Shown here in pieces: positions 22,040 to 64,000 of a DNA stretch of 64,000 nucleotides. Within the stretch, counting starts at the first letter, position 1; each line of letters opens with the position of its first letter. Location of the stretch: assembly GCF_026571515.1 (NCBI RefSeq), contig NW_026853737.1:1-64000 (forward strand), in the 5' to 3' direction. The translations under genes were made by a program, and so were the position numbers. The notes beneath the pieces were generated by a model. It searched no databases and was not told where the DNA came from. It saw nothing but the letters and a program-made list of their open reading frames with translations. This stretch comes from Ruditapes philippinarum. Its lineage: Eukaryota.

Positions 22040-23328
22040 TTATAATATTCTGGCGAGTAGTTTGCATATATGCCATTTTGCAGCATTGTTCCTTTTTCTT
22101 ACTAGAAGTGAAGACAAGTAACATTTTAAAGCTTCTTGATGCCAAAGTTGATCTTCGTAACATAGTCCAAGTAAATTAAGAGCCGTTTCTTTATGACATA
22201 GAATTGCGTTTCCTGTGCAAGTATATGTAAGTTTGGCCAAAGCTAGTCTTTTTTCTTTTGTACTCTTTTGATGTTTATATACTTTGTATTTTAGGAAATA
22301 CAAGAAAGGGAGAGAATCAACCACAGATAAGTCCATCCACATTTCATCTAGCTCTTCTCTGTGCTGCATATCATCTTTACTAGATCTGAACATTTCATAT
22401 TGTAGTTCATGGGGAATACAGTTAAATTCACTTTTATGGAAACGTACACAATACCCTATAAATGGCTGGATTTCAGTAACATCTTTATAACCTAATGCCA
22501 CGAGTTCTCTTGTAAATACATGTGGATGTGGATAGCATAGACAGAATGGGTTTATAAGAGCTGTTCTCTTAAATTCCACACCACTTTCAATATGCCTTAG
22601 AATGTCTCCACATTCTTCCAAATTTTCTGAGCAATAATATATAGAGGTTAGTTTAAGTGTTGTAGAAACACTATTGTATGGATATTGTATAAAATAACTT
22701 AAATACTCATGTGAAACAGGGATAGATTGTCCAATGTTGGACGAGGCCAACACAAATCCTAATGTTGCGTAAATCTCAGGTAAAAGAAACGTGCATGCTT
22801 TCTTTTCTAATTCGCTACCCTTTTCACTAACTTTGTTCAGTTTTTGGATATATGTTGTTACCGTTTCTCTGTTTTCCATTGACAGATGTTTATACTTTTG
22901 TATAACATTAACAAAGAACCAAATATTTAGGTTGAAGCATATATACTCACTGATTTCTTTTTGAGACTGAACACTTGAATCGATCATCATACCAATCATT
23001 TTCAGTTTTATCTTTAATCTTTTACCTAGATTGTCAATTTGAATACCGAATAATCCAAGTCCATATGTGTTTACTAGAATATTAAGTGTGCTAATCAGGT
23101 CAAGCTGTTCCTCGCCCGTGAACTGACCTGCCATCAAATTATTTTCAGTAATAATGAAATGTGGGCATTTCTGACTTAATATAAAGAACCGTAGTTGTAG
23201 CAGACAGACAAACACACATATGTATAAATTATCTTCTCTCCACATTCCGGGCTCTGATCTTTCTATGCAATGAAACAATGTTGTTTTGCACATAAAACTT
23301 GAAATTTTAGTGTCATCGTCAAAAGTTA
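22040..23328 (-). pseudogene. cGLR copy 1: 5'-truncated Mab-21/TPR gene that lacks the catalytic N-lobe but keeps an open frame
   Basis: Near-identical to copies 2 and 3 from TFDDDTKISSFMCK to the end. Homology stops at 23328, and no GS...DxD motif remains. Confidence 0.85.
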
Positions 23329-23468
23329 TCTTAATCACACAATATATGAACAAGTATACAGCAAATGATTTTAGAATGGCAACCAAGAAAGATAATGCAT
23401 AAGCCGAGAAAGGTGGACTTGTCTTCAGTCAAAATTTATTTAGTTTTGTATATTAAATTCTTACTTTT
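23325..23468 (-). repeat. Inverted copy of the cGLR 3'-flank segment 20621-20770
   Basis: Reverse complement of aaaagtaagaatttaatataca...tgtgattaagataac, with a small deletion and 4-bp GTTA microhomology to the cGLR. Confidence 0.9.
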
Positions 23469-23974
23469 ATGCATATGGATGAGTTAAAGACAGATTGACG
23501 ACCAAAAATGAAAGAGTTGATTGGGGATACTTTCAAACTGTTGTCACAACTTCTCAGATGAGACGCGACAGGATAAAGAAAGAACTTCTCCCGCTTTATA
23601 GGCCAATTTGTTCAGCAAACCAATCTGCCACTCATCTGTGTCGCGATAAAGTAGATGAAGAACTTAAAAAGTTAAGGGACAATAGGTACTTCCAGGCGTT
23701 CTTTTTTAAGGAAAACGCCAGGGCATGGCGATCCTGGTACCTCAATACAAACGGAAACATGCGCTCAATTCACAGGGCAACATGAATTTCAATTTACAGC
23801 GACGGAGTCAAAATCACAATTACAGAACAAAACAGCAGAAAAAGAATACTTTCCAATCAAGAGCACAGAAAAATTTATATCCGAAGTAAGTAATCATAAT
23901 ATGAAATATTCCTCTACCATTATTAGTACTTCACACAATTTTCGGGCGGGGAAGACCAGAATAGCGTTGCATGA

Positions 23975-25687
23975 GTGGAGAAAATAACCAAAGATAAATG
24001 GATACTAGAAACTGTATACGGTTATCGGGTACAGCTGTCAGCAACTCCTTTTCAGTATAAAATTCCCAAACCATTTAATTTCAAAGAAACAGAAAAACAA
24101 GCAATACAGTTTGAAATTACACGTTTTTTAAATCAAGGAATAATAGAACTTGCAGACGAAAACTTGGACGGAGAATACATTTCGAATATATTCACAAGAC
24201 CAAAATCAGACGGACGGATTAGAATTATTTTGAATTTAAAATCCTTCAATAGCAACTACATCAGCAAAATACATTTTAAAATGGAAATTTTGGGATCAGT
24301 GACCACAGCAATGAGGAAAAATTGTTATTTCGGCAAGGTCGACATTTCTGATGCTCTTACACTATACCTATATACGAACGGGACAAACGGTATTTTCGTT
24401 TCTTTTTCGAAGGTGTAAAATATCAATTTACTGCGCTTGTGATGGGATTTGCAGAAAGCCCTATGATATTCACTAAACTGTTGAAGCCAGTTTTCATTTA
24501 AGAGCGCGGGGTCATTTAAGTTCAATTTATATCGACGACGGTTGTTTGCAAGGTCAGTCATACTCCGCCTGTGCTCGAAATATCAGCGAAACAATTGATT
24601 TATTAGACAAGTTAGGATTTACAATTTCAATGAGTAAAAATGTCCTGGTTCCGTCGAAAAATATTGTATGCTGTGCTCTAAAACAATGACTATAAGATTA
24701 ACAAAGGAAAAAGGTGGTGATATCACAGAGCTTTGCAATAACATTATAACATGCCGGCGAATAACAATTCAAAAATTTTCAAAGATTATTGGCAAACTGC
24801 TTGCAGCATCACCGGGGGTTATGCATGCTCCGTTGTACATAAAACCTTTAGAACGACATAAGGAAAGGGAACTGAAAAACCATAAGGATAATTTTAATAG
24901 TTTTTTTACAATCACGCCAGATATTTTGGAAAATTTGCGATGGTGGATCACTCATATACATTCATGTTTCAAAAGTATTACATCGCCTGACCCGAATAAC
25001 ATTATGTTTACTGATTCTTCGGGACATAATTATGTGGGGCGCGTATGATAAAACAGAAAATAGACGAACAAATGGATTTTGGTCGGCGGAAGAACAAAAT
25101 CAACATATCAATGTGTTAGAATTAAAAGCGTGTCAAGTTGGGCTATGGTCGCTTTTTAAACACAATAGAAATATCTATATGAAAATTTATATGGATAACA
25201 CTACGAGTGTATCATGGGAACAATAGATTCATTGAATAAAACTGCGCGCGATATCTGGCATTGGTGTATTCAAAGAAACATTTTGTTGTCAGCACATCAT
25301 GTATCGGGGTCATTGAACCGCACGGCAGACAAACTGAGTCGTACTGGAAATGAAGATCTAGAATGGAGTATATCAACCGAGATGTTCGCAGCAATTTGTC
25401 GGTCTTTCCCGTCCTTAAATTTAGATTTTTTTGCATCTCGTTTAAATAAAAAGTTTCCGACGTGTGTTTCAAGACAACCTGACCCAAATGCTTTTGCTAT
25501 AGACGCTTTTTCACTGTCATGGCATGATAATTGTTATTATTGTTTTCCACCTTTCAGTGTAATAGGCAGGGTCCTGCAAAAAGTAGAAATAGATCAAACA
25601 GAACTACTGTGTTTAGTAGCACCAATATTGCCTGCACAGACTTGGTGGCCGACTTTAATACAACTTATTGTTGCACCATGCCTTTAA
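23975..25687 (+). pseudogene. DIRS pol (RT, RNase H, methyltransferase-like), fragmented
   Basis: ORFs at 23975, 24668, 25032 and 25214 lie in shifting frames and carry collinear pol motifs. Confidence 0.88.
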
Positions 25688-25799
25688 CTTCAACACCCTC
25701 AGGACATCCTTACGTTGTGCCATCGACCGGGAAAGAAACACCCATTAAAAAGATGAGGCTGGTGTTTTTCCCCATATCAGGAAAGCGCTTGAAGATAGA

Positions 25800-26729
25800 G
25801 ATATTTCAAATGAAGCTTAGCAGATTATCATTAATTCGTGGCGGAGAACAACCAGGAAACAGTATGAAACATATCTTAAACAATGATTTCATTTCTGTGA
25901 AGGGAAACATGATCCCTTTAAACCCCTTGTAGCAACAGTGATAGCATTTTTGTCTCACCTATATTCAAAAGGGATAACCTACAGTGCGATTGGTATTGCC
26001 AGATCAGCAATTTGTGGGTTTGTTAAGATAACTGCAAACGTAGATCTCAGCAATAATAACCAGATATCACGGTTCATGAAAGGTGTATTTAACACAAAGC
26101 CGGCACTTCCGAGTAATTAAGAGATATGGGACGTGCGAACAGTTTTAGATTTTTTATCAAAAACACAAAATGATACTTTATTATTTTTGGCTGGAAAATT
26201 AAGCATGTTGTTTTTATTGTTGTCAGCTCAGCAGTGTCAAACACTCATCTCATTTGTTTGGAAGACATTAATATTTCAAACGAAAAATTGATAATAAACA
26301 CTCCACATTTATTAAAAAACATCGAAACCTGGTCGGCATCAGACACCCTTTTTGTTTGACAGTTTTAAATCAGATAAACGCTTGTGTATTGTCAGCGTCA
26401 TTAGTGAGTATTTACAGGGAACGAAATACCTCAGAAATACCAATAAATTACTGATATCAACGGTCAAGCCTCATGGGGCCGTTTCTAAACAAACAATTTG
26501 TCGCTGGATTAAGCTAATTATGCACAGAGCTGGGGTGCATAACTCATTCAAACCACATAGCACGCGCGCTGCTGCGTCTTCAATCGCACACATGCGTGGA
26601 GTCCCGTTACAGACGATAATTGATTCGGCGGGATGGAGCAATGCAAAGACATTCGCTAAATATTATAATAAACCAATATCAGATACCAATGGAAAATCTA
26701 TGCAGGCTATCATAGATATTGCTAATTAG
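25800..26729 (+). pseudogene. DIRS tyrosine recombinase, fragmented
   Basis: FLSHLYSKGITYSAIGIARSAI, RFMKGVFN, HSTR, GW and terminal YY; internal stop at 26118-26120 and frameshifts. Confidence 0.88.
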
Positions 26730-27296
26730 AGAGTATAATAATGGGACCAAAAAAAACAACAACAACAAAACTGTAGTAATAATAATAATTATAGCTGTAT
26801 TTAATTACTTTAGTTGTGCATGGCATTTACATTCTGTAAAAATATGAAAAACATGTGTTTTTACCGAATTGCAAAATACAAAAAGACCTTTATGTCTTTA
26901 AATTAAATCGTTGTTCTTCATAATAACATGAAAGATAAATATTTACTACATGGCGTAGGACGGCACGTAATGTCCTTTCCAAAATATCGCAAAAAGGACT
27001 CTAAAATCTCTGTGGGGCCCATTAGTGAGTTTATATGTAGGATGAAATTATATGATTAAGCTAGACTTACCTGTAAGGTGAAGGTTAATCATGATTTCAT
27101 CCACATAAAACTCACTAAGGGCTCACACACCCAACCCGCTACCTCCCCGTTTAAACTGATATTTTTGCGATATTATTCGACATTACTTACTCTAAAATAT
27201 GACCACTGGCTGCTGATAGCTGCGTCTTCTCTCTGTGTGAGCCCTTAGTGTGAGCCCTTACAGGTATGTCTAGCTTAATCATATAATTATAATATG

Positions 27297-28333
27297 AAAC
27301 AAGAAACATGGCAATGCCACAAAACCAGGTTTTCAATTATCATCATTGTAGATACATATGTTGTAGTTGAAATACAAGCAACAAACAATGTAACTATGTG
27401 CTATATAAATCATGAATAATGAATTTTCTATTTTTAGCAACTGTAACCTTGACCCTAGGGGGTCAAAAAGCCATCCCAAGTGAGGTCTTTATAAAAACTT
27501 GCTTTACACCATATTTCATAAAAATATCTTATTCCAAACTAGTTATTGACTGGAAACCTTTTTCCTATTTTTAGTAACAGTGACCTGACTAGAAACAGAT
27601 TTTCTATTTTTAGCAACAATGACCTTGACCTTGACTCTACAGGACCCAAAAGCAGGCAGAATGAGCTGGCAGGCATGCAGCAACCTAGATAGTTTCTGTT
27701 TAATAACTAAATTAAGTTTGTTGTGATTAAAAGGATATATTACACTAATAATTAAATTTTATGGAAAAAACAAAGGGCAATAATAATGTAAAAACTTATC
27801 CAATCACAACACCCCGACAATATGCATCAGAGCACTTGAAGACAAAGCTAATCTGTGAAAGTTTGAACAAAATCCCTTGAGAAATGTAGAAGGAGTTGCA
27901 CAACAGAACAAATTGTTCACTATATACTCTATATAAGGAAAAAAACAACAAAGGGCCATAATTAGGTCAAAAGTTATCCAATCACAAAACACCAACAATA
28001 TGCATCAGGACACTTGATGACAAAGCTTCTGTGAAAGTTTAAACAAAATCCTTTTTTGAGAAATTTAGGAGGAGTTGCGCACAAAAGAAATTGTTCACTA
28101 TATATTCTATATAATGAAAAACAACAAAGGGCCATAATTAGGTCAAATATTATCCAATCACAAAACCCTGACAATCTGCACCAGGGCACTTGACAAAGCT
28201 TCTGTGAAAGTTTGGTCAAAATCCGTTAAGAAATGTAGGAGGAGTTGCGCACAGAAAAAAATGTTTACGCCCGTCCTCCCACCGACATACCTCAATCTAA
28301 TAACCAGTTTTTTCCTTCGTAAAACCTGTTTAA
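27297..28333 (-). mobile_element. HINE-like element in the cGLR-2 3' flank
   Basis: Paralogue of 20928-21925. Confidence 0.8.
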
Positions 28334-28410
28334 TGATTGTCACATATTTAAGTGAGCTAAATACTGTAGAAATCTAGAGAAAGAATATACATGTTACTAT
28401 AACTCGTGCA

Positions 28411-30513
28411 TCAGCAAATGTATTTCGTTAGCATTATTCTGGCGAGTAGTTTGCATATATGCCATACTGCAACATTGTTCCTTTTTCTTACAAGAAGTGA
28501 AGACAGGTAACATTTTAAAGCTTCTTGATGATCAAATTGATCTTCATAACATTGTCCAAGTAAATTTAGAGCTGTTTCTTTGTGATAAAGAATTGCGTTT
28601 TCTGTGCAAGTATATGTAAGTTTGGCCAAAGCTAGTCTTTTTTCTTTTGTTCTCTTTTGATGTCTATATACTTTGTATTTTAGGAAATACAAGAAAGGGA
28701 GATAATCAACCACCGATAAGTCCATCCACATTTCATCTAGCTCGTCTCTGTGCTGCATATCATTTTTACTAGATCTGAACAGTTCATATTGTAGTTCATG
28801 GGGAATACAGTTAAATTCACTTTTATGGAAACGTACACAATACCCTATATTTGGCTGGATTTCAGTAACATCTTTATAACATAATGCTACGAATTTTCTT
28901 GTTGATAAATGTGGATGTGGATAGCATTGACAGAAGGGGTATATAAGAGTTGTTTTCTTATATTCCACATCACTTTCAATATGCCTTAGAATGTCTCCAC
29001 ATTCTTCCAAATTTTCTGAGCAATAATATACTGAGGCTAGTTTAAGTGTTGTAGAAACACTATTGTATGGATATTGTTCAAAATAACTTAAAGCCTCATG
29101 TGAAACAGGGATAAATTGTCCAATGTTGGACGAGGCCAACACAGATCCTAATGTTGCGTAAATCTCAGGTAAAAGAAACGTGCATGCTTTCTTTTCTAAT
29201 TCGCTACCCTTTTCACTAACCTTGTTCAGTTTTTGGATATATGTTGTTACCGTTTCTCTGTTTTCCATTGACAGATGTTTATACTTTTGTATAACATTAA
29301 CAAAGAACCAAATATTTAGATTGAAGCATATATACTCACTGATTTCTTTTTGAGACTGAACACTTGAATCGATCATCATACCAATCATTTTCAGTTTTAT
29401 CTTTAATCTTTTACCTAGATTGTCAATTTGAATACCGAATAATCCAAGTCCATACGTGTTTACTAGAATATTAAGTGTGCCAATCAGGTCAAGCTGTTCC
29501 TCGCCCGTGAACTGACCTGCCATCAAATTATTTTCAGTAATAATGAAATGTGGGCATTTCTGACTTAATATAAAGAACCGTAATTGTAGCAGACAGACAA
29601 ACACACATATGTATAAATTATCTTCTCTCCACATTCCGGGCTCTGATCTTTCTATGCAATGAAACAATGTTGTTTTGCACATAAAACTTGAAATTTTAGT
29701 GTCATCGTCAAAAGTTAAATATGATTTTGCAATCATTTTCATTAAAACGTAACAGCGTAATTGAGTTATGTTCAAACTAAACATTAAACACCTTTCTGCA
29801 ATTGAAGTTGATATTCTCCATTCAATTTCCGGATTTTTGCTGATTTTACTTCCAACCGGAGCTAAGAAAAATCCCTTACTTACACAATCCTTTTTCATTT
29901 CTTGTGTTGGCCATCTACCCAATCCTTGTCGCTGTAGCCAATCACATGCTGAACGTGGCCATGAAAAACAAGGATAAGCAATTACAATATCCATATAATC
30001 AAATCTATTTTCTCTTTGTGTGCTTATTGCGGGTCCATGTATATCTGCTCCGTTAAAATATTTCAAACTAACAAGACAGTGATTTTTTGTATTTTCCAAA
30101 ACCAAATTCTCTGGATAACTGAAAACATTACCTTCACCAGTCTTTGCTTGACTGGATTCGATTAGCTGGAGATAACAGTATCCTTTAGTTGTGTTATTAT
30201 CTTTGACCATAAGATAGTTGTGCTTGCCATTTTGAAAGTCATGAATATCCTGTATCACATTATACGCATTATCGCAAGCTAGTATATCATAATCAGATTT
30301 AAGTCCTTTTGTAACAGACCCTTCACTTTGACTACCTAGAACATATGTGGTGACATCCTCTCCAATTAACCTGTCTATTAATGTTGTAATAGTCTCATTC
30401 AGCATAAATGTCTGTCTTCTTTTCATCACCAATTTCTTGTTTACACCAATATCGTCCATAACTTGAGATAATTTTGAAGATATGTTATAATCATATTTAG
30501 TTTTGCTTAACAT
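28411..30513 (-). CDS. cGLR copy 2: Mab-21/cGAS-like nucleotidyltransferase with C-terminal TPR-like region, 700 aa, single coding exon
   Basis: NTase motif LGSQSEG...SDYDIL and third Asp in DYMDIVIA. Mab-21 motifs EWRISTSIAE, SSFMCKTTLF and CPHFII..NL. TPR-like KETALNLLGQCYE...EALKCYLSSL. Acceptor tttcag|A ATG at 30514, so the ORF-track extension to 30576 is probably intronic. Confidence 0.92.
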   Translation of the reverse strand: MLSKTKYDYNISSKLSQVMDDIGVNKKLVMKRRQTFMLNETITTLIDRLIGEDVTTYVLGSQSEGSVTKGLKSDYDILACDNAYNVIQDIHDFQNGKHNYLMVKDNNTTKGYCYLQLIESSQAKTGEGNVFSYPENLVLENTKNHCLVSLKYFNGADIHGPAISTQRENRFDYMDIVIAYPCFSWPRSACDWLQRQGLGRWPTQEMKKDCVSKGFFLAPVGSKISKNPEIEWRISTSIAERCLMFSLNITQLRCYVLMKMIAKSYLTFDDDTKISSFMCKTTLFHCIERSEPGMWREDNLYICVFVCLLQLRFFILSQKCPHFIITENNLMAGQFTGEEQLDLIGTLNILVNTYGLGLFGIQIDNLGKRLKIKLKMIGMMIDSSVQSQKEISEYICFNLNIWFFVNVIQKYKHLSMENRETVTTYIQKLNKVSEKGSELEKKACTFLLPEIYATLGSVLASSNIGQFIPVSHEALSYFEQYPYNSVSTTLKLASVYYCSENLEECGDILRHIESDVEYKKTTLIYPFCQCYPHPHLSTRKFVALCYKDVTEIQPNIGYCVRFHKSEFNCIPHELQYELFRSSKNDMQHRDELDEMWMDLSVVDYLPFLYFLKYKVYRHQKRTKEKRLALAKLTYTCTENAILYHKETALNLLGQCYEDQFDHQEALKCYLSSLLVRKRNNVAVWHICKLLARIMLTKYIC

Positions 30514-31751
30514 TCTGAAATAAAACAAGAAGTATTTTTGTAAAAGATACTCGGCCGAAGTATAACTGGTTATCATGCAAAATTGTGTTACTTCAATACA
30601 AAAAGAAATTTTAGCGATACTTGCAGAACAATGACATCAAATTATTTCTTGTAGCTAAGATAATACTCATTTTGTAAACATTGAAATTAAATTATAGCAT
30701 ATTGATATCGATAATTTTTCAAAGTACATTTGTAGGATAACTTCTGTCTTAAGGATCCCTTTTACTTGTTTTACATTTGACTTTATAAAATTTCTAATCA
30801 TTAACAAAGAATTATCCTTTACAATTTATTATAGAAAAATAAGGTCTTTTAAACAACAATAACTTTAACAATTATTGTCAGGAAATTTTATGACTAAAAA
30901 GTTTTGCGTTTTACTTTTAATTAAGGCGTTTGAGAGAGGGTAAAAATCTTATACAAGTTTACTTTGTTTTTGTCCTGAGGGCCATGGACAGACTTTAAAT
31001 AATTCAGATAATTATACAGTGGACTTTCGATAATTCTTTAATGTAAAGAGCATCCACTAACATTATCAATTTGACTGATATTGGATTTGACTTGTTCAAA
31101 CGATGACTCATATCGTATCTTGTACGTAACTTATCCTTGCTGTGATATAATAATTTTAAGTAAACATTTTAATAATTTATCACCTATTGTTTTAAAGTAA
31201 GATAAAGTTTAAAGTTCTTTATAAGCTGTCAAATTTTATTGAACTCGTGTCATATGACCCATATTGATAATTGCTACACAATCTCTTAAACCCCTGTCTA
31301 TGGTGGCTGATTTGTGCCATTCGTGTTTTCGCCCCGCGACCCCGCCAAGCAAAAAGTCGAGAATTAACAAGTTAAAACGGCTGGGTCACCAGGAGCGAGG
31401 GCGCGGGCGAAGTTAAATAAATAAAACTTCGCCCCGCGGGGGCGCGGGTCGAGATTTAAGAAATAAAACGGCGGGGCGCGAAGCGAAAACACGCTAAAAA
31501 GCGCCTCCGCTCAAACTCCTCACAGTGATTACCTCCCTTGGCAGAATTGTAATCACTGTCTTCAAAGACGTCACATGATGACGTAACGTCGAAATTTAAA
31601 TGTAAATATCGACCGTTTATATATAGAGAACACAGCTTCCCATACATACTTTATTCATTCTTTTATTTGAATTAGACATAACAATTTTATAGATTTTGAT
31701 TAAAATATTTTACTCAAGGATGAGCATTGTATATATCTTTAAAATAGTTTA

Positions 31752-37334: not shown

Positions 37335-37695
37335 TGTTTTGAATTCTAGCCTCATTAATATTCATAACTTCCGAATGTTTCCGAGACTATTTCGATCGTT
37401 TCCGTATATGATCGGTAATTTGCGCGTTCACTCGTCGCTTAAAAAGTCGGCGGTTTTTTAAGATTTTAGTTATTTTCATATATCTTTTTCTCTTCCAATA
37501 TTATGAATTTCCTGGTTATTTTAATGTCAAATGTTATATTATTTTAAAGTGTTTTATCATACAAGTGTCTGTCTTTGTTAGCAAACATGGAATTAAAGCC
37601 GAATATATCTTTAAAAGTTATATGGTTTTATATGATATATAAAATGCTTTATAGTCGCCTGAATTCAGAATATATCTTTTAAATTATCTTCTCAC

Positions 37696-37850: not shown

Positions 37851-38049
37851 GGATACGCCCTCGATTCATACTAAAAGGATGATAACTTGAGCCTTTGTTT
37901 ACAGAACAGAGATTAATAACAATGTGAACAATAGGTATTGTCCAACAATATTGACCTGACACCTCATTAACTTTCGTAAAGGTCATTTGAATAAACACTG
38001 ACCAGTATCTATCGAATATATCGATACATTTGCTAACTTCACTCGTCAG

Positions 38050-50125: not shown

Positions 50126-50197
50126 ATCTTAATATTACATACTATGACATTATTTTCACAGCTTCAATTAACCAATTTTTAAAATGTTGTAATATAT

Positions 50198-54282: not shown

Positions 54283-56125
54283 AAACAAGAAACATGGCAA
54301 TGCCACGAAACGAGGTTTTCAATTATCACCATTGTAGATACCTAATATGTTGTAGTTGAAATACAAGCAACAAGCATAACTATGTGCTATATAAATCATG
54401 AATAATGAATTTTCTATTTTTAGCAACTGTAACCTTGACCCTAGGGGGCTAAAAAGCCATCCTAAGTGAGGTCTTTATAAAAACTTGCTTTACACCAAGA
54501 TATCTTATTCCAAACTAGTTATTGACTGGAAACCTTTTTCCTATTTTTAGCTCACCTGTCACAAAGTGACAGGGTGAGCTTTTGTGATCGCTTTTTGTCC
54601 GGCGTCCGTCCGTCAACTTTTACTTTAAATGACATCTCCTCATAAACCACAAAGCCAATTTCATCAAAACTTCACAGGAATGTTCCTTTGGTGGTCACCT
54701 TTAAAAATTGTTCAAAGAATTTAATTCCATGCAGAACTCTGGTTGCCTAGGCAACCGAAAGAAAAAACTTGAAATATCTTCTTTTAAAAAACCCTAAGAG
54801 CTAGAGCTTAGATATTTGGCATGAAACATCTTCTAGTGAGTGTCTACCAAGTTTGTTCAAATAAAAGCTCAGGGGTCAAAATTGGCCCTGCCCCGGGGGT
54901 CATTGATTTTCCTTATATGTGTATAACAAAAACTTAAAAAATCTTCTTTGAAAAAACCTAAATAGCTAGAGTTTAGATATTAAGCATGAAACATCTTCAA
55001 GTAAGTGTCTACAAAGTTTGTTCAAATAAAAGCCCTGGGGTCAAAATTGGCCCCGCCTCTGGGGTCATTTATTTTCCTTATATGTCTATTGCAAAAACTT
55101 AAAAATCTTCTTTGAAAAATCCCAAATAGCTAGAGTTTAGATATTAAGCATGAAACATCTTCTAGTAAGTGTATACAAAGTTAAAAAACTTCTTTTAAAT
55201 AACCCAATGAGCTAGAGCTTAGATGTTTAGCAAGAAACATCTTCTTATGGGTGTCTACCAAGTTTGTCCAAATAAAAGCCCTTGGGTTAAAATTGGCCCT
55301 GCCAGGGGGGGGGGGCTATATACAGGTGAGCGACCTCAGGGCCATCATGGCCCTTTTGTTAGTAACAGTGACCTGACTAGAAACAGATATTCTATTTTTA
55401 GCAACATTGACCTTGACTCTACAGGACCTAAAAGCACAAAAGCAGGCAGAATGAGCTGGCAGGCATGCAGCAACCTACATGAAGATAGTTTCTGTTTTAT
55501 AACTAAATTAAGTTTGTTGTGATTAAAAGGGTATATTACACTAATAATTAAATTTTATGGAAAAAAACAAAGGGCCATAATAAGGTAAAAACTTATCCAA
55601 TCACAAAACCCCGACAATATGCATCAGAGCACTTGAAGACAAAGCTAATCTGTGAAAGTTTAAACAAAATCCCTTGAGAAATGTAGGAGTTGCGCAACAG
55701 AACAAATTGTTCACTACATACTCTATATAAGGAAAAAAAACAAAGGGCCATAATTAGGTAAAAAATTATCCAATCACAAAACCCCAACAATATGCATCAG
55801 GACACTTGATGACAAAGCTTCTGTGAAAGTTTAAACAAAATCCTTTGAGAAATTTAGGAGGAGTTGCGCACAAAAGAAATTGTTCACTATATATTCTATA
55901 TAAGGAAAAAAAACAAAGGGCCATAATTAGGTCAAATATTATCCAATCACAAAACCCTGACAATCTGCACCAGGGCACTTGATGACAAAGCTTCTGTGAA
56001 AGTTTGGTCAAAATCCGTTGAGAAATGTAGGAGGAGTTGCGCACAGAAAAAAATGTTTACGCCCGTCCGCCCGCCGACATACCTCAATCTAATAACCAGT
56101 GTTTTCCTTCGGAAAACCTGTTTAA
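54283..56125 (-). mobile_element. HINE-like element in the cGLR-3 3' flank, interrupted by 54549-55360
   Basis: Paralogue of 20928-21925. Confidence 0.8.
54549..55360 (+). mobile_element. HINE-like element (15471 family), specific to unit 3
   Basis: Inserted in cctattttt|agtaacag; empty sites at ~21200 and ~27570. Confidence 0.85.
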
Positions 56126-56226
56126 TGATAGTGAGCTAAATACTGTAGAAATCTAGAGAAAGAATATACATGTTACTATAACTCGTGAACAGTTAGTCTT
56201 ATATCAGCAAATGTATTTCGTTTGCA

Positions 56227-58305
56227 TTATAATATTCTGGCGAGTAGTTTGCATATATGCCATTTTGCAGCATTGTTCTTTTTTCTTACTAGAAGTGAAG
56301 ACAGGTAACATTTTAAAGCTTCTTGATGACAAAGTTGATCTTCATAACATTGTCCAAGTAAATTTAGAGCTGTTTCTTTGTGACAAAGAATTGCGTTTCC
56401 TGTGCAAGTATATGTAAGTTTGGCCAAAGCTAGTCTTTTTTCTTTTGTTCTCTTTTGATGTCTATATACTTTGTATTTTAGGAAATACAAGAAAGGGAGA
56501 GAATCAACCACCGATAAGTCCATCCACATTTCATCTAGCTCGTCTCTGTGCTGCATATCATCTTTACTAGATCTGAACATTTCATATTGTAGTTCATGGG
56601 GAATACAGTTAAATTCACTTTTATGGAAACGTACACAATACCCTATAAATGGCTGGATTTCAGTAACATCTTTATAACACAATGCCATGAGTTCTCTTGT
56701 AAATACATGTGGATGTGGATAGCATAGACAGAATGGGTTTATAAAAGCTGTTCTCTTAAATTCCACACCACTTTCAATATGCCTTAGAATGTCTCCACAT
56801 TCTTCCAAATTTTCTGAGCAATAATATGTAGAGGCTAGTTTAAGTGTTGTAGAAACACTATTGTATGGATATTGTATAAAATAACTTAAAGCCTCATGTG
56901 AAACAGGGTTAAATTGTCCAATGTTGGACGAGGCCAACACAGATCCTAATGTTGCGTAAATCTCGGGTAAAAGAAACGTGCACGCTTTCTTTTCTAATTC
57001 GCTACCCTTTTCACTAACCTTGTTCAGTTTTTGAATATATGTTGTTACTGTTTCTCTGTTTTCCATTGACAGAGCTTTATACTTTTGTATAACATTAGCA
57101 AAGAACCAAATATTTAGGTTGAAGCATATATACTCACTGATTTCTTTTTGAGACTGAACGCTAGAATCAATCATCATACCAATCATTTTCAGTTTTATCT
57201 TTAATCTTTTACCAAGATTGTCAATTTCAATACCGAATAATCCAAGTCTGTATGTGCATAGTAGATTATTAAGTGTGCTAATCAGGTCAAGCTGTTCCTC
57301 GCCCGTGAACTGACCTGCCATCAAATTATTTTCAGTAATAATGAAATGTGGACATTTTTGACTTAATAAGAAGAACCGTAGTTGTAGCAGACAGACATAC
57401 ACACATATATATAAATTATTTTCTCTCCACATTCCGGGCTCTGACCTTTCTATGCAATGAAATAATGTTGTTTTGCACATAAAACTTGAAATTTTAGTGT
57501 CCCCGTTAGATAAGAAATATGTTTTTGCAATCATTTTCAATAAAACGTAACAGCGTAATTGGGTAATGTTCAAACTAAACATTAAACACCTCTCTGCAAT
57601 TGAAGTTGATATTCTCCATTCAATTTCCGGATCTATGCTGATCTTACTTCCAACCGGAACTAAGAAAAATCCCTTACTTACACATTCTTTTTTCATTTCT
57701 TGTGTTGGCCATCTACCCAATCCTTGTCGCTGTAGCCAATCACATGCTGAACGTGGCCATGAAAAACAAGGATAAGCAATTACAGCATCCATATCATCAG
57801 TTCTATGTTCTCCTTGTGTGCTTATTGCGGGTCCATGTATTGCTGCTCCGATCAAACATTTCAAACTAACAGCATCGTGATGTTTTGTATTTTTCAAAAC
57901 CAAATTCTCTAGATAATCATTACCTTCACCAGTCTTTGCTTGACTGGATTCGATTACCTGGAGATAACAGTATCCTTTAGTTGTATTATCATCTGTGGCT
58001 ATAAGATAGTTGTGCTTGCCATTTTGAAAGTCACCAATATCCTGTATCACATTATACGCATTATCGCAACTTAGTATATCAAAATCAGATTGAAGTCCTT
58101 TTGTAACAGACCCTTCACTTTGACTACCTAAAAAATATGTGTTGACATCGTCTCCCTTTAACCCGTCTATTAAAGATAGAATTTTCTCATTCAGCATAAA
58201 TGTATGTCTTCTCCTCATCACCAATTTCTCGTTTACACCAATATCGTCCATAACTTGAGATAATTTTGAAGATATGTTATAATCATATTTAGTTTTGCTT
58301 AACAT
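56227..58305 (-). CDS. cGLR copy 3: Mab-21/cGAS-like nucleotidyltransferase with TPR-like region, 692 aa
   Basis: FLGSQSEG...SDFDIL, DDMDAVIA, EWRISTSIAE, TPR-like C-terminus. ATG at 58305 follows the acceptor tttcag|A. Confidence 0.92.
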   Translation of the reverse strand: MLSKTKYDYNISSKLSQVMDDIGVNEKLVMRRRHTFMLNEKILSLIDGLKGDDVNTYFLGSQSEGSVTKGLQSDFDILSCDNAYNVIQDIGDFQNGKHNYLIATDDNTTKGYCYLQVIESSQAKTGEGNDYLENLVLKNTKHHDAVSLKCLIGAAIHGPAISTQGEHRTDDMDAVIAYPCFSWPRSACDWLQRQGLGRWPTQEMKKECVSKGFFLVPVGSKISIDPEIEWRISTSIAERCLMFSLNITQLRCYVLLKMIAKTYFLSNGDTKISSFMCKTTLFHCIERSEPGMWRENNLYICVYVCLLQLRFFLLSQKCPHFIITENNLMAGQFTGEEQLDLISTLNNLLCTYRLGLFGIEIDNLGKRLKIKLKMIGMMIDSSVQSQKEISEYICFNLNIWFFANVIQKYKALSMENRETVTTYIQKLNKVSEKGSELEKKACTFLLPEIYATLGSVLASSNIGQFNPVSHEALSYFIQYPYNSVSTTLKLASTYYCSENLEECGDILRHIESGVEFKRTAFINPFCLCYPHPHVFTRELMALCYKDVTEIQPFIGYCVRFHKSEFNCIPHELQYEMFRSSKDDMQHRDELDEMWMDLSVVDSLPFLYFLKYKVYRHQKRTKEKRLALAKLTYTCTGNAILCHKETALNLLGQCYEDQLCHQEALKCYLSSLLVRKKNNAAKWHICKLLARIL

Positions 58306-60091
58306 TCTGAAATAAAACAAGAAGTATTCTGAAATAAAACAAGAAGTATTTTTCATAAAAGATACTCGGCCGAAGTAAAACAGGTTAACATGTAAAATTA
58401 TGTTATTTCTAAGTTTTCAATACAAAAGAAATTTTAGCGATACTTGCATAACAATGACATCATAATTATTTCTTGTAGCTAAGATAATACTCATTTTGTA
58501 AACATTGAAATTAAATTATAGCATATTGATATCGATGATTTTAAAAAGTACATTTGTAGGATAACTTCTGTCTTAAGGATCCCCTTTACGTTATACATTT
58601 GACTTTATAAATTTTGTAATCATTAACAAAGAATTATCCTTTATAATTGATTTTTACTGTGGCAAAAACTATCCTTAACATTTTACTTTAGAGCTATCCT
58701 TATAATCTTCTTTTAGAACTGTAAGAACTATCCTTTATATTTTATTTTAGAATGGTTAAAACTATCATTTTATTTTATAATTACTAATGAGATTCACCGA
58801 TTCCAGTTTGTAATTTTATCATGACCAATGAAAATTCTTTCATTATTCAGTCCTTCCCTGTTTATTTTACAAGAAGTCAAACTGATAACAGATGGACTTC
58901 GTCCAAAAAAAACGTGATAGTGTGGTTAAGCGTTTGTATATATTTGCGCAATCAACACAATGACACTCCATCAACCACCCCACATTAGTGTTTTTTGGGG
59001 CAATTGTACCCCCATCGAATGAAACATGCTATTGAATATTTCCCTACCCGATATGTCCCTAAAGAATAATTACCCGAAAATCCCCCCCCCTTTTCTTCTC
59101 ATTCAGTTGTGTGTTATTATCTTAACATTACACTTTATAATCCGCATTTCCGTCTTTTGAAGGATATAAACCCAAGAACTTGAAATCTTGTTGTGTGTCA
59201 TATATCGTGTAATGTCACAGTGTAGCCAAATGTAAAACAAATGCTGTACATGAGAGAGCATGTTTAAATGTTGTTTGAATAGAAAAGAGTGGTCTTTAAA
59301 CAGAGACATGGTTCTGTCAAAATCTATAATATGGATGTGTACTTTTCTTACCTAAAATAGGCGTGAAAATCTTATAAAAAGTTCTAATAAGGTTCATTAA
59401 AAAAGTAGATGTTACAAATCAACTGAAATTTTAGCGAAAGAAAACATTTCTGTTTTTATGCATCATATTACGAGTATGAATTAATTGTTATTTAAAAAAT
59501 AAGGTCTTTTAAATAACTATTATTTTTACAATTATTGTCAGGAAATTTTATGACTAAAAAGTTTTGCGTGTTACTTTAAATAAAGGCATTTGAGAGAGGG
59601 TAAAAATCTTTTACAAGTTTACTTTGTTTCTGCCCTGAGAGCCATGAAACGACTGTAAATAATTCAGATACCTATATAGGACTTTCCATAATTCTTAAGA
59701 CAAAGAGCTTCCATAAATATTGTCAATTGACTGGTAGTGTATCAAACAATGTGATTAAGGATGAATCATTTTTTACCTTGACCATATTCGAAGCAAAATA
59801 AGCTGTCATATAACAATTTAAAGCAAAACATTTTATGTAAATTTTATGTAATTTATCACATGACTAAAGAAATTTATCACTTAAACTAAAGAAAGATAAA
59901 GTTAATATTTCTATATAAGCTGTCAAATTTAATTCAACTCATATGACGTGACTGTAATCGCAAACAGAATTAGGATGCAAGTATTTCAAGTGCGCTTAAA
60001 AGTTATTTGATTTCATATGATATGTAAAATGTTTAATAGTCGTCTGGCCCGCGGTCACCCTTGTATTACACGGGGCCTGAATTCCTCTCAC

Positions 60092-60250
60092 CTTATATCG
60101 ATCGTTAGCCTTATTTTCCAAAAAAAAAAACTATCTACATGTATTAATCCTACGAATTTTTGTTTAAACTTTTTTTAGGCCTATTCCATAAAATGGTCAC
60201 TTTTCGTACTGTCCACTTGGTTTATATCGAATTTACACAAAGGATAATAC
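60092..60250 (-). promoter_or_regulatory. Putative non-coding first exon and promoter of cGLR-3
   Basis: Donor AG|GTGAGA at 60092/60091; conserved blocks shared with 37696-37850. Confidence 0.55.
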
Positions 60251-60268
60251 CCTACTGTTAACCATAGT

Positions 60269-60787
60269 CACGGGGGAGGAACTGTTACACGAAGGATGGA
60301 GTTCTTATGATAACTTGTCAAGGAGTTCTTGTGATAACTGTCACGGAGTTCGTCGGAAAACTTTTGTATATACTACAAAAACACTCGTCAAAAATGGTAA
60401 TTTTCATCTTTAAAAAGTGAGTTTTAGGTGCTAAATTAAACTTTAATGATTTAGTTTGCCTTACATCTTGTAATTTTAATTCGGTAATTATGTATGGCAA
60501 AGATGAAGACCAGAAATAAACAGGTCAATGCTTGCGAGTTGGATAGTTGCAAATAATTTGGAAATTTTACTCAAAACTACCAGAATCTAAGAAAGAGGCG
60601 ATAAATAATGGCCTATGAATCAGTTTTTAACATATAATACAAGATATAATGCAAGCTTAATCATTAAAGTTTAATTTAGCACCTAAAACTCAAAGTTTTT
60701 CGACGAACTCCGTGACCGTTATAAGAAGAACTCCTTGACAAGATATCATAAGAACTCCATCCTTCGTGTAGCAGTTCTTCCCCCGTG
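60269..60787. mobile_element. Foldback MITE with CAC...GTG ends and 5-bp TSD (Transib-like signature)
   Basis: ~95-bp TIRs cacgggggaggaactgttacacgaaggatggagttcttatga. TSD ATAGT at 60264-68 and 60788-92. Confidence 0.8.
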
Positions 60788-60916
60788 ATAGTATTAAACT
60801 GATTAATTCGTCATTGCACACAATATATTAATCTGTGACATTCGGTAATAGTGAAGCGTTATAGCGCAATAGTGTATACTATGGGTTTATAATTTGTATA
60901 ACAAATGGCCTACGTA

Positions 60917-61291
60917 CGAGGGTCATTCAATAATTTCTGATAATGACCTTATTGTGTGATACACACCTACCGTATATATATTCCTTCAAAGTGACCACTT
61001 TCCATCTGTACAAAAGATTGGCAATGTCCGTTGTTAGGCAACAGCGTGTGATGTGTTGAAGTTCCGTGGCCATGGCAACTTTAAGTTTCTCTAAGTCATT
61101 AAATCTAACACCCCTGAGTTTAGGAAAAAGGTCATAGTCACAGGGACTCTTGTACTCATGAGCGACGTGCAAATGACGTCATATATATATGTAACGTGAT
61201 ACGTCGCATGGAAACATGCTCTACTTCAATTAATAGTCAATGAAATAAAAAACGATATGGGGTCATTATCAGAACTTATTAAATGACCCCG
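60917..61291 (-). mobile_element. mariner deletion derivative
   Basis: TA|cgagggtcattcaataatttctgataatgacc TIR with a decayed partner at 61261-61291. Peptide SPCDYDLFPKLRGVRF...RWK resembles a mariner transposase C-terminus. Confidence 0.8.
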
Positions 61292-63309
61292 AGACCGCGC
61301 AAGTCCATTTTGTTTCTTTTTTATATTTTAAACATTATTAAAGCTATGTCTTTATGATTTTAGTGAGTTTTTTTAAGATATGTGTCACTTATTTTGGTAA
61401 ACAAAAAATGGTTTAAGAATTAATATCTTAAATTCAGTGACTGCATAGATAAACTCTCATTATCAGATTAGTGGATACAATAAGAATATCAGGGTAACCT
61501 ATTTGTTATTAAAAGAGCACATGTCAATGTTTGCATTGAAAATTATACTTATTGCAAACTTATTTACGTAACATATATACCAAAATTGTGTGTAACAGTT
61601 TAGTGTGGAGCAAACATTGGGTTACGATGCGCAATTTTCATATTGTGCTACACTCATTCGAACTGTTTTTTAAAAAGTTTAATAATGGTACATGTATTTA
61701 CGAAAAATATGTATTATCTGATAGTAAACCAATCAGTACTCAGTGTTTGAATATAATATACTTACAACATGGCATTTCATTTTGCGTTTCAAAAAAATAA
61801 TATTTAGTATCTTTTTCCATCAATCGAACTGTTTGAGGAATATATTAAAAGGCATGATAATTATAGAAAAATAAAGCAAGCGAAATTATGCATGACTAAT
61901 ATAGTTATTTAAAGTTTAATTCATAAAACACAAAACATGCTATGTCAAAGTTGTGCGAAAAAAAATGATACCATGATGTTTAGAACTAATTTAGTTCTTA
62001 TGATATACATGTATAAAATGATATAAAACAAACATGGCCATACATTGTATTTCCATCAACATGAATTTGAGATCAATTGAAATCTTTATTATATCCTTAT
62101 CTTTTTAATATACATTTTGATATTTGTCACAATTGTATGTTCTATGTACATCCATATGTTTAATTGTAAAACGTATAGTGGCTAGTCAAACTGTAAAGTG
62201 AAATAAACTGAATATAATAAACTGAAATAAATTTGTTCGTTCGTTCATTCTTATTACTATGGAGCATATGTTAATTTAATAAGATATTTGTAGTTGTAGT
62301 TTGTGGTTAAATCTATAGTTTTTTCACAAATAAAAGGTCAACGTAGGGATTTATCGTCATCTTATAGGCTAGCAATAGAAACCGACAGATACACAAATTG
62401 ATATGAATATAAACGATTGTAAATGTATTTATTATACAATGATCGCGAATATGATAAAATCAGCATACCACTTTATACAACATGTACTTGTCCATCCAAA
62501 GTATAAGAAAAAATTCGAATCTTAAGTCTTTTACCTGTTTTAACCTGAATCTAATAATAAATAATGTATGGTCGTTATTTCTTTATTAACTGATATTGTA
62601 CTTTCTCTATTCATGTGTTGATGCTAAAAGCATTTTTTCATGTTAACAGCAATAAGGATTTTGAATTTAATTGAATACAAAACGAGACAATACAGTGTTT
62701 CTAAGTTGCATCATATCCGTATAAACAAATTTGCAAGAACTTGGCCATTTCTATTAAATTATACTGCTAAAATAATGATAACAGTAGGTATGGAACCACA
62801 TACTTCTCATTCATTAGACTTTTACTTAACCGACTGTGCTATTGCGGATGTGACTAGCCGATAGTAACTTTCAAAACAGATATATACTAGTTCATGTATT
62901 ATAAGATATAATTATCTTGCAATTTTGATTTTCCATATTTATAAGCTGATTAATACTTTTTTTCAAATAAAGCTTACATAATAAAAGTTTTCTTCACATG
63001 AGTAAAAAATTATAAAATAATTATCTAAATCATCTGCGTACTTTGCATATATTTATGTTCTACCAATCATTACATGTATATGAAATGAGTCTCACATTTT
63101 CCATGTGAGCTTTATACTGTAGAAAACTAGAGAAAGAATATAACTTCATGTATATCTTGTTAATCACTGATCTGATGAGTAGATGGAAATTCATGACTAA
63201 TTGTACTTGGTTTTTTTTGTTGTTAAAACTATAACATCTAGATATCACTGATATACACTATAGCTCATTAACAGTAAGTCTTAGATCAGCAAATGTAATC
63301 ATTAAAATA

Positions 63310-64000
63310 TCATTTCGTTTGCATTATTCTGGCGAGTAGTTTGCATATATGCCATACTGCAACATTGTTCCTTTTTCTTACTTGAAGTGAGGACACATAA
63401 TATTTTAAAGCTTTTTGATGCTCAAGTTGATCTTCATAACATTGTCCAAGTAAGTTTAGAGCTGTTTCTTTGTGACAAAGTGTTGTGTCCCTTGTGCAAG
63501 TATCTATAAGTTTAGCCAAAGCTAGGCATTTTTCTATTGTTTTCTGCTGATGTCTATTTACTTTGTATTGCAGAAAGTATAAGAAAGGGACAAAATCAAC
63601 CACAGATAAGTCCATCCACATTTCATCTCTCTCATCCCTATGCTGCCTATCATCTTTACTAGATCTGAACATTTCATATTGCAGTTCTTGGGGAATACAG
63701 TTAAATTCAATCTTATGGAAACGTACACAATACCCTATACATGGCTGGATTTCAGTAACATCTTTATAACATAATGTCACGAATTCTTCTGGTGCTTCCA
63801 GTGGATGAGGATAGCATCCACAGACGGGGTTTATAAGAGCTGTTCTCTTAAATCCCACATCACTTTCAATATGCCTTAGAATGTCTCCACATTCTTCTAT
63901 ATTCCCTGAACAATAATATATAGAAGCTAGTTTAAGTGTTGTAGAAACACTACTGCCTGTATATTGTTTAAAATAAGTTAATTCCACATGTGAGACAGGG
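63310..64000 (-). CDS. cGLR copy 4, 3' end (TPR-like region); more divergent; continues beyond window
   Basis: Open frame collinear with copies 1-3 (TTLKLASIYYC, YCVRFHK, ELQYEMFRSS, KETALNLLGQCYE). Confidence 0.88.
   Translation of the reverse strand, partial: PVSHVELTYFKQYTGSSVSTTLKLASIYYCSGNIEECGDILRHIESDVGFKRTALINPVCGCYPHPLEAPEEFVTLCYKDVTEIQPCIGYCVRFHKIEFNCIPQELQYEMFRSSKDDRQHRDERDEMWMDLSVVDFVPFLYFLQYKVNRHQQKTIEKCLALAKLIDTCTRDTTLCHKETALNLLGQCYEDQLEHQKALKYYVSSLQVRKRNNVAVWHICKLLARIMQTK

What the first reader, a model, noticed from the sequence alone, without database searches (positions are those of the whole stretch)
22040..64000. Tandem array of four cGLR (Mab-21 NTase) + TPR genes: a candidate diversified innate-immune sensor locus next to INTS7
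Seen: four co-oriented paralogues. Copies 2 and 3 are intact, with the GS...DxD...D catalytic signature followed by ~330 aa of helical/TPR-like sequence containing a conserved CxCYPHP motif. Known: cGLRs are cGAS homologues that make cyclic dinucleotides for STING and are strongly expanded in bivalves. Inference: the TPR-like tail is a ligand-sensing or autoinhibitory module, and the array is an uncharacterised, rapidly turning-over receptor cluster whose ligand and product are unknown.
Basis: partly seen in the sequence, partly recalled or inferred. Interest (0 to 1): 0.8.

Follow-up and report, generated by a model that had tools for sequence, protein, structure and literature searches.

The report
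Clam cGAS-like enzyme gene array
This stretch of Manila clam DNA holds a tandem array of cGAS-like immune-enzyme genes with a helical repeat tail, one small part of a family of hundreds of such genes in clams, of a kind that has been catalogued but never tested.

Summary
Four co-oriented minus-strand paralogues lie at 22040-23386 (a 5'-truncated fragment), 28411-30576, 56227-58356 and 63310 onward. The fourth is intact and runs to base 65397 of the contig.

Each intact copy encodes about 700 aa. The first ~355 aa are a cGAS/cGLR nucleotidyltransferase with G-S, D-x-D and a third Asp. The next ~345 aa are a TPR-like helical solenoid that carries a small four-Cys insert. The full-length AlphaFold model has pLDDT 92.

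The genome is Ruditapes philippinarum. The array is not special in itself. A strict family motif occurs at 237 places in this genome against 0 for a reversed control, often in arrays of up to 12. Named relatives are all bivalves.

The catalytic residues are kept in 114-116 of 116-117 venerid paralogues, so these are probably active enzymes. The NTase domain is acidic (median pI 6.0), unlike known nucleic-acid-sensing cGLRs. The "YPHP" stretch lies in the family's most variable block.

RNA evidence for copy 2 is weak. Both the cGLR-TPR architecture and the bivalve cGLR radiation are already in print (Li et al. 2023). I rate this a new member of a known kind. This scan also holds two unchecked notes on cGLR relics elsewhere in this genome.

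The parts
22040..23386 (-). Copy 1. A 5'-truncated fragment with part of Mab-21_C plus the whole tail. It has no GS, DxD or third Asp. Homology to copy 2 stops at 23328/23329.
23329..27284 (+). Segment unique to the copy 1 unit. It replaces the 5' half of copy 1 and holds broken ORFs of a tyrosine-recombinase retroelement (DIRS-like): Phage_integrase 3.7e-8 and a Dam-like methyltransferase at 2.2e-4, below cut-off.
   Evidence: The DIRS gene order is recalled, not tested.
28411..30513 (-). Copy 2 coding exon: 700 aa from the ATG at 30513, plus the stop. The open frame runs on to 30576 through the polypyrimidine tract of a splice acceptor.
   Evidence: (P0001)
30514..30535 (-). Splice-acceptor-like polypyrimidine tract plus CAG, ending 1 nt before the ATG. 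The same feature is seen in copies 3 and 4 and in 5 further loci, which implies a 5'-UTR intron.
30286..30336 (-). Copy 2 NTase active-site motifs: G60-S61 ... S73-D74-x-D76.
29989..29991 (-). Copy 2 third catalytic Asp (D175). It aligns with the VD(L/I) strand of Sp-cGLR1 and cGAS.
28807..28932 (-). Copy 2 Cys-framed insert in the tail: C528-x-C530, the hypervariable stretch 531-548, then C559 and C569.
56227..58356 (-). Copy 3, an intact 709-aa open frame. The homologous ATG is at 58305. It is 87% identical to copy 2.
63310..64000 (-). Copy 4, 3' part. The gene is intact (695 aa) and ends at base 65397 of the contig, beyond the window.
27765..28333 (.). Tandem repeat of about 173 bp directly 3' of copy 2. 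The same repeat lies 3' of copy 1 (21387-21925) and copy 3 (55561-56125), and as an orphan array at 39900-40770.

Best explanation
The locus is a tandem array of lineage-specific cGAS-like receptor (cGLR) genes of the Manila clam. Three copies are intact and one is a 5'-truncated relic. Each coding sequence sits in a single exon behind a 5'-UTR intron. Each intact protein joins a Mab-21/cGAS-fold nucleotidyltransferase, with a complete active site, to a C-terminal TPR-like solenoid carrying a four-Cys insert. The array arose by recent DNA-level tandem duplication and was then disrupted by transposon insertions. It is one of many such arrays in a bivalve-wide family with hundreds of members per genome. 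Inferred, not shown: the proteins are ligand-activated enzymes that make a nucleotide second messenger. Also inferred: the variable surfaces confer ligand specificity or regulate activation, and the ligand is probably not bound as nucleic acid on the canonical basic cGAS surface. These surfaces are an NTase loop (residues 121-180), the first tail helices (about 390-420) and the Cys-framed loop (531-548).
For: Identity. Pfam gives Mab-21_C at 4.5e-8 and 1.4e-8, and Mab-21 NTase at 1.6e-6 in copy 3. A family profile of 71 sequences hits Sp-cGLR1 8gjy at 9.5e-29, cGAS at about 1e-22, MB21D2 at 3.6e-17 and MAB21L1 only at 2e-12. The AF2 model has pLDDT 92.1 and pTM 0.92. Foldseek matches it to cGAS, MB21D2 and Sp-cGLR1 at E 4e-10 to 4e-9 with TM by target of 0.60-0.72.

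Active site. Among 117 venerid paralogues the counts are G60 116/116, S61 114/116, D74 114/116, D76 116/116 and D175 116/117. Among 71 sequences reaching down to 23% identity they are 70, 71, 69, 69 and 67 of 71.

Tail. The model of the tail alone has pLDDT 90.3. All 50 rows listed by VIA-align are TPR or TPR-like chains, with Z 8.6-11.5. The last repeat matches designed consensus TPR proteins at about 1e-12 with the profile.

Selection. 61 of 62 scored genomic copies have open frames of at least 697 aa. Windowed pN/pS over 17 recent pairs is 0.09-0.33 across residues 211-330 but 1.24-1.51 across 121-180 and about 0.93 at 391-420 and 511-540.

Family size. 237 motif matches against 0 for the control.

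DNA-level duplication. Copies share flanks and a conserved splice acceptor 1 nt before the ATG in 8 of 8 loci examined.

Charge. Median NTase pI is 6.0 and 3 of 117 exceed 8.5. Li et al. report pI above 8.5 for dsDNA- and dsRNA-sensing cGLRs (PMC9980059 passage).

Pathway. There is a STING_LBD match in the genome at 30 bits against a cut-off of 27.
Against: No activity, ligand or product is known for any member.

Expression of copy 2 is not shown. Depth over the CDS is 0 in nearly every bin of two raw RNA runs. A third run gives a patchy 0-7, with only about 4% of it read. Between 97% and 99% of the laid raw reads fit only in part. The short perfect or near-perfect contigs in X1 come from a run whose RNA status is a guess.

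Pairwise dN/dS among the local copies is high, at 0.51-0.74. That also fits relaxed constraint.

The TPR Pfam models stay below their gathering scores. Foldseek finds no PDB match at E <= 1e-3 for the tail. VIA Z of 11.5 is under the tool's own caution level of about 13 for helical repeats.

The pI comparison uses a different algorithm from that of Li et al. The 17 pairs behind the windowed pN/pS are not independent. I had no model coordinates, so the Cys cluster geometry and the position of the tail relative to the active site are unverified.
Confidence: 0.7

Rival explanations
1. The three intact local copies are young duplicates drifting towards pseudogenes. They would be silent DNA whose open frames survive only because the duplications are recent.
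For: dN/dS is 0.51-0.74 among copies 2-4, with dS only 0.09-0.19. Copy 1 is already a fragment. RNA depth over the copy 2 CDS is nil or patchy. The intervals between copies are TE-rich. Two unchecked scan notes report cGLR relics elsewhere in this genome.
Against: Three frames of about 700 codons remain open at up to 21% protein divergence. Every catalytic residue and all four Cys are kept in the three intact copies. pN/pS is strongly uneven along the gene, 0.09 against 1.5, which neutral decay does not predict. That test pools other subfamilies with the local copies.
Confidence: 0.15
2. The proteins are Mab-21-fold scaffolds or nucleotide binders without synthase activity, like MAB21L1 or MiD51. 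The TPR tail would serve as an adaptor for protein complexes.
For: Many Mab-21 proteins are not enzymes (PMC10732462 passage). A 2026 shrimp paper, seen only as a search listing and abstract, reports Mab21 proteins acting outside the nucleic-acid-sensing paradigm. TPRs are typical protein-interaction modules.
Against: G-S, D-x-D and the third Asp are kept in 114-116 of 116-117 paralogues. The profile is closer to Sp-cGLR1 and cGAS (1e-28, 1e-22) than to MAB21L1 (2e-12).
Confidence: 0.1
3. The gene is cargo of, or spread by, a mobile element or by retroposition, and that explains the hundreds of dispersed single-exon copies.
For: Dispersed copies on different contigs share only compact blocks of 2.5-3.4 kb. 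Satellites and TEs flank many copies.
Against: The ends of shared blocks differ from pair to pair, and no common terminal repeats or transposase accompany the gene. An intron acceptor is retained immediately upstream of the ATG in 8 of 8 loci, which retrocopies would lack. Many copies sit in regular co-oriented tandem arrays.
Confidence: 0.04
4. The four copies are an assembly or haplotype artefact.
For: Clam genomes are highly heterozygous (recalled). I could not lay DNA reads on the junctions.
Against: The copies differ by 6-20% in DNA. They lie on one contig, with different insertions between them. No second contig holds a near-identical array; the next best match in the genome is 68% identical.
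Confidence: 0.03

Closest known systems
Animal cGAS-like receptors (cGLRs), e.g. Sp-cGLR1 (PDB 8gjy) and vertebrate cGAS
   Same: They share the Mab-21/cGAS NTase fold and the complete G-S, D-x-D and D active site. Lineage-specific radiation in bivalves is described, with more than 200 genes in Dreissena polymorpha and Crassostrea virginica (PMC9980059 passage).
   Different: This family adds a ~345-aa TPR-like tail with a four-Cys insert. Its NTase domain is acidic to neutral (median pI 6.0), whereas the nucleic-acid sensors have pI above 8.5. Sequence identity to solved cGLRs and cGAS is only 14-19%. Ligand and product are unknown.
cGLR-TPR fusion class listed by Li et al. 2023 (Fig. 1C, Table S2) and the Mab-21+TPR module noted in a Crassostrea gigas TRADD-N protein (Kaur et al. 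2021)
   Same: The domain order is the same: cGLR NTase followed by TPRs.
   Different: Those are catalogue entries with no biochemistry. I could not see Table S1 or S2, so I cannot tell whether the venerid family, such as the Mercenaria members, is among them. The oyster example carries extra HEPN, Ig, DED and TRADD-N domains that are absent here.
MAB21L1/2 and MB21D2
   Same: Same superfamily fold.
   Different: According to Li et al., the MAB21L proteins lack a predicted functional active site (figure legend passage). This family keeps it. Profile similarity is weaker, at 2e-12 for MAB21L1.
TPR sensor modules such as PlcR/Rap receptors, MalT domain III and IFIT
   Same: The tail aligns structurally with them at Z 9.3-11.1 or at Foldseek E 0.05-0.09 for IFIT5.
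   Different: There is no sequence relationship, and the scores are in the range the tool warns may reflect only a common helical arrangement. These modules have no counterpart of the Cys-framed beta insert, as far as the listed alignments show.

Membership tests
cGLR (cGAS-like receptor, Mab-21/cGAS NTase superfamily) | Bilobal Mab-21/cGAS nucleotidyltransferase fold | tested here: met
   Pfam Mab-21_C and Mab-21 score above cut-off. Profile against PDB gives 8gjy 9.5e-29 and cGAS about 1e-22. Foldseek gives E 4e-10 and TM by target 0.60-0.72 on an AF2 model of pLDDT 92.
cGLR (cGAS-like receptor, Mab-21/cGAS NTase superfamily) | Complete active site: G-S loop, [DE]-h-[DE] and a third acidic residue | tested here: met
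   Present in copies 2, 3 and 4. Kept in 114-116 of 116-117 venerid paralogues and in 67-71 of 71 distant members. Copy 1 lacks the whole region.
cGLR (cGAS-like receptor, Mab-21/cGAS NTase superfamily) | [quoted passage not shown] | not testable with these tools
   Needs recombinant protein assays.
cGLR (cGAS-like receptor, Mab-21/cGAS NTase superfamily) | A STING-type receptor in the same genome | tested here: inconclusive
   One exon-level STING_LBD match at 30 bits (cut-off 27), E 2.2e-4, on contig C7837. I built no gene model, and any link to this family is unknown.
Nucleic-acid-sensing cGLR subset | High pI (above 8.5) and a basic ligand surface (Li et al. passage) | tested here: not met
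   NTase domain pI is 6.3-7.0 in copies 2-4. The median is 6.0, and 3 of 117 exceed 8.5. The pI algorithm differs from the paper's.
TPR repeat proteins | Pfam TPR models above gathering score | tested here: not met
   The best are TPR_12 at 22.8-25.2 bits against 30.1 and TPR_1 at 17.6-23.3 against 27.8, and only on the last repeat.
TPR repeat proteins | TPR-like right-handed helical-hairpin solenoid | tested here: inconclusive
   All 50 listed VIA rows are TPR or TPR-like, with Z up to 11.5. Atlas structure TM is 0.38-0.55 to TPR clusters. The best Foldseek PDB hit is E 9e-3. The profile matches consensus TPR designs at about 1e-12 on one repeat.
MAB21L-type inactive Mab-21 proteins | Absence of a functional active site | tested here: not met
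   The active site is present and conserved.
Transposable-element cargo gene | Copies bounded by common termini and linked to a transposase | tested here: not met
   Block ends vary among 6 pairs of 4 dispersed loci, and no shared termini were seen. An intron acceptor is retained.

The most novel reading that the evidence does not exclude
The cGLR-TPR family could be a germline-encoded, NLR-like repertoire of enzyme-receptors, with at least 237 loci in one clam. On this reading the receptors sense non-nucleic-acid ligands such as pathogen proteins, peptides or other cationic or neutral molecules. Sensing would go through the TPR solenoid and a hypervariable loop held by a four-Cys (possibly zinc) knuckle, together with a fast-evolving NTase loop. 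Each receptor would convert recognition into a nucleotide second messenger. This would extend cGLR sensing beyond dsDNA and dsRNA and would give bivalves a diversified cytosolic recognition system.
Probability: 0.25. Interest if true: 0.75.

Novelty: new member of a known kind. Interest (0 to 1): 0.4.

Why it matters
Li et al. (passage) raise the possibility that cGLRs respond to ligands other than nucleic acids, but they name none. This clam family combines four things. Its active site is strictly conserved. Its NTase domain is acidic. It has an appended TPR-like module. Its variation is concentrated in a few loops. That makes it a concrete place to look for non-nucleic-acid cGLR ligands and for new nucleotide signals, in a farmed species that suffers infectious mortality. 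As a genomic finding it is ordinary: one array among many in a gene class that is already catalogued.

Tried and rejected
Retrocopy origin of the single-exon copies is rejected. A polypyrimidine+CAG acceptor sits 1 nt before the ATG in copies 2-4 and in 5 further loci.

TE cargo is rejected on variable block ends.

The "CxCYPHP" string as a family motif is rejected. Only CxC (plus C559 and C569) is conserved.

Expression could not be settled. The single read-laying run was dominated by repeat-derived reads at 27850-28430 and 31230-31815, and no splice joint to the acceptor at 30514 was listed.

The Foldseek PDB search with the tail gave nothing at E <= 1e-3.

A Pfam scan of 10 longer relatives looked for other fused domains. 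It found only one sub-threshold Trypsin_2 (26.3 against 27.6 bits), in a 1025-aa Mercenaria protein.

An Atlas search of the tail, excluding Mab-21 clusters, returned only short mollusc fragments without Pfam families.

Taxon look-ups of 20 distant representatives named only 7. All 7 are bivalves: Mercenaria, Mactra x2, Sinanodonta x2, Dreissena and Potamilus. The other 13 are unnamed ENA, JGI or Logan records, so the family's true range is not established.

Literature searches found no paper on a clam cGLR-TPR family. The Mercenaria genome paper showed 0 occurrences of cGAS, Mab-21 or cGLR in the listing.

I did not run a tail-only homologous-protein search or a phylogeny with characterised cGLRs.


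Full report
WHAT IS THERE. The window has no N. On the minus strand it holds four paralogous open frames. They are 22040-23386 (448 aa), 28411-30576 (721 aa), 56227-58356 (709 aa) and 63310-63987, which runs off the window. tblastn with copy 2 finds exactly these four places.

Self-comparison shows DNA-level duplication that includes flanks. Segment 20916-23328 matches 27285-29717 at 93.5%. Segment 27564-30830 matches 55352-58652 at 91.5%. Segment 28422-29110 matches 63312-64000 at 87%.

Copy 4 continues beyond the window and is an intact 695-aa ORF. Copy 1 stops matching at 23328/23329, which corresponds to about residue 287 of the copy 2 frame. It keeps part of Mab-21_C and the tail but has no catalytic motif.

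In place of the missing half of copy 1 lies a 3.96-kb segment with broken ORFs of a tyrosine-recombinase retroelement. These include Phage_integrase at 3.7e-8 and a sub-threshold Dam-like methyltransferase. I call it DIRS-like from recalled gene order.

A pogo-type DDE_1 transposase with a PHD finger lies between copies 2 and 3, at 32157-33642. INTS7 exons lie on the + strand at 5237-19798.

GENE STRUCTURE. The collection's gene call for copy 2 (P0001, 700 aa) starts at the ATG at 30513. The 21 codons upstream in the open frame read through a polypyrimidine tract that ends in CAG one base before that ATG. The same acceptor-like motif precedes the ATG of copies 3 and 4. It also precedes the ATG of the 68%-identical gene on contig C4211 and of four dispersed paralogues.

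So the coding sequence is one exon, but the genes have a 5'-UTR intron and are not retrocopies. I did not find the 5' exon. The reads laid list no joint at that acceptor.

WHOSE GENOME. Three ORFs from other contigs of the same assembly are letter-identical to named Ruditapes philippinarum proteins. The best named relatives are from R. philippinarum and Mercenaria mercenaria.

WHAT THE PROTEIN IS. Pfam gives Mab-21_C (4.5e-8 and 1.4e-8) and, in copy 3, the Mab-21 NTase domain (1.6e-6). TPR models score below cut-off and only on the last repeat. By single sequence the best solved relative is 8gjy at 1.3e-6.

With a 71-sequence family profile, 8gjy scores 9.5e-29, cGAS about 1e-22, 8gjw 2.2e-17, MB21D2 3.6e-17 and MAB21L1 2e-12. 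Designed consensus TPR proteins reach about 1e-12 on the last repeat.

AlphaFold2 on that alignment gives pLDDT 92.1 and pTM 0.92. Foldseek aligns about 380 columns of the model to cGAS, MB21D2 and Sp-cGLR1 at E 4e-10 to 4e-9, with TM by target of 0.60-0.72.

The tail folded alone (365 aa) has pLDDT 90.3. It has no Foldseek PDB match at E <= 1e-3; the best is a consensus TPR at 9e-3. All 50 listed VIA-align rows are TPR or TPR-like chains, with Z 8.6-11.5. The tool warns that such scores can reflect a common helical arrangement. The Atlas structure search agrees, with TM 0.38-0.55 to TPR clusters.

Between the TPR-like helices the model places a small beta-containing insert at residues about 521-603.

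ACTIVE SITE AND VARIATION. In copy 2 the G-S ... S-D-x-D motif is at 30286-30336 and the third Asp at 29989-29991. The third Asp aligns with the VD(L/I) strand of Sp-cGLR1 and cGAS.

Among 117 venerid paralogues of 640-760 aa, taken from the 120 best hits, the counts are G60 116/116, S61 114/116, D74 114/116, D76 116/116 and D175 116/117. For the Cys residues they are C528 115/117, C530 116/117, C559 117/117 and C569 114/117.

In 71 sequences reaching down to 23% identity, the catalytic positions hold in 67-71 of 71 and the four Cys in 48-61 of 71.

The most variable 10-residue blocks are 531-540 (3.03 bits, the YPHP stretch), 401-410 (2.98), 411-420 (2.73), 391-400 (2.69), 141-150 (2.63) and the C-terminal end.

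Nei-Gojobori dN/dS is 0.74 for copies 2-3 (dS 0.088), 0.60 for 2-4 and 0.51 for 3-4. I pooled 17 non-independent recent pairs from three subfamilies. Their pN/pS is 0.09-0.33 over residues 211-330, 1.24-1.51 over 121-180, and 0.93-0.94 over 391-420 and 511-540, with 0.57 overall.

The pI of the NTase domain is 6.3-7.0 in copies 2-4. Across the 117 paralogues its median is 6.0, and 3 of 117 exceed 8.5.

FAMILY SIZE AND RANGE. The own-genome protein search had 841 first-look candidates and scored 62. All 62 matched, and 61 of them have open frames of at least 697 aa, mostly at 44-47% identity on many contigs.

A strict back-translated 11-residue motif occurs 237 times in the 1.41-Gb genome against 0 for the reversed control. 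The matches include co-oriented arrays such as 12 on contig C4899 and 6 on C5714.

Against 1.84 billion cluster representatives there are 2809 hits at E <= 1e-3 and 311 at E <= 1e-30. Of 20 distant representatives looked up, 7 carry names and all 7 are bivalves. Dispersed paralogues share only 2.5-3.4 kb, with variable ends.

EXPRESSION. One call laid three raw RNA runs and one contig set on 27700-32100. Over the copy 2 CDS, depth is 0 in almost every bin of X23 and X24 and a patchy 0-7 in X21, of which about 4% was read. Between 97% and 99% of the laid raw reads fit only partly, and most sit on the 3' satellite and on a repeat at 31230-31815.

X1 holds 100-231-nt contigs over 28421-29920 with 0-8 differences, but its RNA status is a guess. 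I call expression unresolved.

HOW IT MOST LIKELY WORKS. Shown: the fold, an intact and conserved active site, a TPR-like tail, uneven constraint along the gene, tandem duplication, and a STING_LBD match in the genome at 30 bits against a cut-off of 27.

[quoted passage not shown] Li et al. report pI above 8.5 for dsDNA and dsRNA sensors and propose non-nucleic-acid ligands for acidic cGLRs.

The acidic NTase domains here point the same way, as does variation concentrated in an NTase loop and two tail segments. The tail or a composite surface may act as the specificity determinant. Whether the tail senses or autoinhibits cannot be told without coordinates or experiments.

COMPARISON AND NOVELTY. 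Li et al. state that 87% of cGLRs are stand-alone and that some carry TPR or ankyrin modules. They also state that D. polymorpha and C. virginica encode more than 200 cGLRs. Kaur et al. note a Mab-21 cGAS domain followed by TPRs in an oyster protein.

So both the kind and its bivalve radiation are known. I rate it a new member of a known kind, of moderate interest.

Two unchecked scan notes report cGLR relics elsewhere in this genome. Another note proposes an upstream basic-domain exon splicing onto copy 2. I confirmed only two things about that proposal. An ORF at 37068-37355 has a phase-2 donor compatible with the acceptor at 30514. No read supports the joint within the stretch laid.

Noticed in passing
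window 5237-19798 (+): These are exons of Integrator subunit 7 (INTS7_N end, INTS7_HB x2, INTS7_C). The intervening sequence is filled with 139-173-bp tandem repeats.
   Followed up: partly
window 37068-37355 (-): This 95-aa ORF has a lysine/arginine-rich N-terminal part. A CAG|GT donor in phase 2 is frame-compatible with the acceptor 1 nt before the copy 2 ATG, about 6.6 kb away. This is the idea of scan note s1-803947. Phase alone has a 1-in-3 chance of matching, and no read joint was seen.
   Followed up: partly
window 31228-31815: This stretch is heavily covered in all RNA runs, with depth up to about 120 per strand class in X21 and 40-50 in X23 and X24. Hundreds of reads break off at 31511/31512 and at 31543-31551. 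A core of about 34 nt is therefore shared by many different transcripts or repeats. I have no explanation.
   Followed up: no
window 21387-21925, 27765-28333, 39900-40770, 55561-56125: A satellite of about 173 bp lies directly 3' of copies 1, 2 and 3 and of the C4211 paralogue, with one orphan array that has no gene. It is very abundant in the RNA and contig runs.
   Followed up: partly
window 32157-33642 (-): A pogo/Tigger-type DDE_1 transposase ORF (1.6e-19) is followed by a PHD-finger ORF that scores below its cut-off. It lies between copies 2 and 3.
   Followed up: partly
window 60927-61172 (-): This short ORF resembles the C-terminal end of a mariner-type transposase. The resemblance is recalled and was not tested.
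   Followed up: no
G000 contig C4899:9442-197851 (+): Twelve co-oriented family motif matches are spaced about 9-35 kb apart. This array is much larger than the one in this window.
   Followed up: no
protein P0131 (Mercenaria mercenaria, 1025 aa): This family member has an extra C-terminal trypsin-like peptidase region (Trypsin_2 at 26.3 bits, just under the 27.6 cut-off). It may be a cGLR-TPR-protease fusion.
   Followed up: partly
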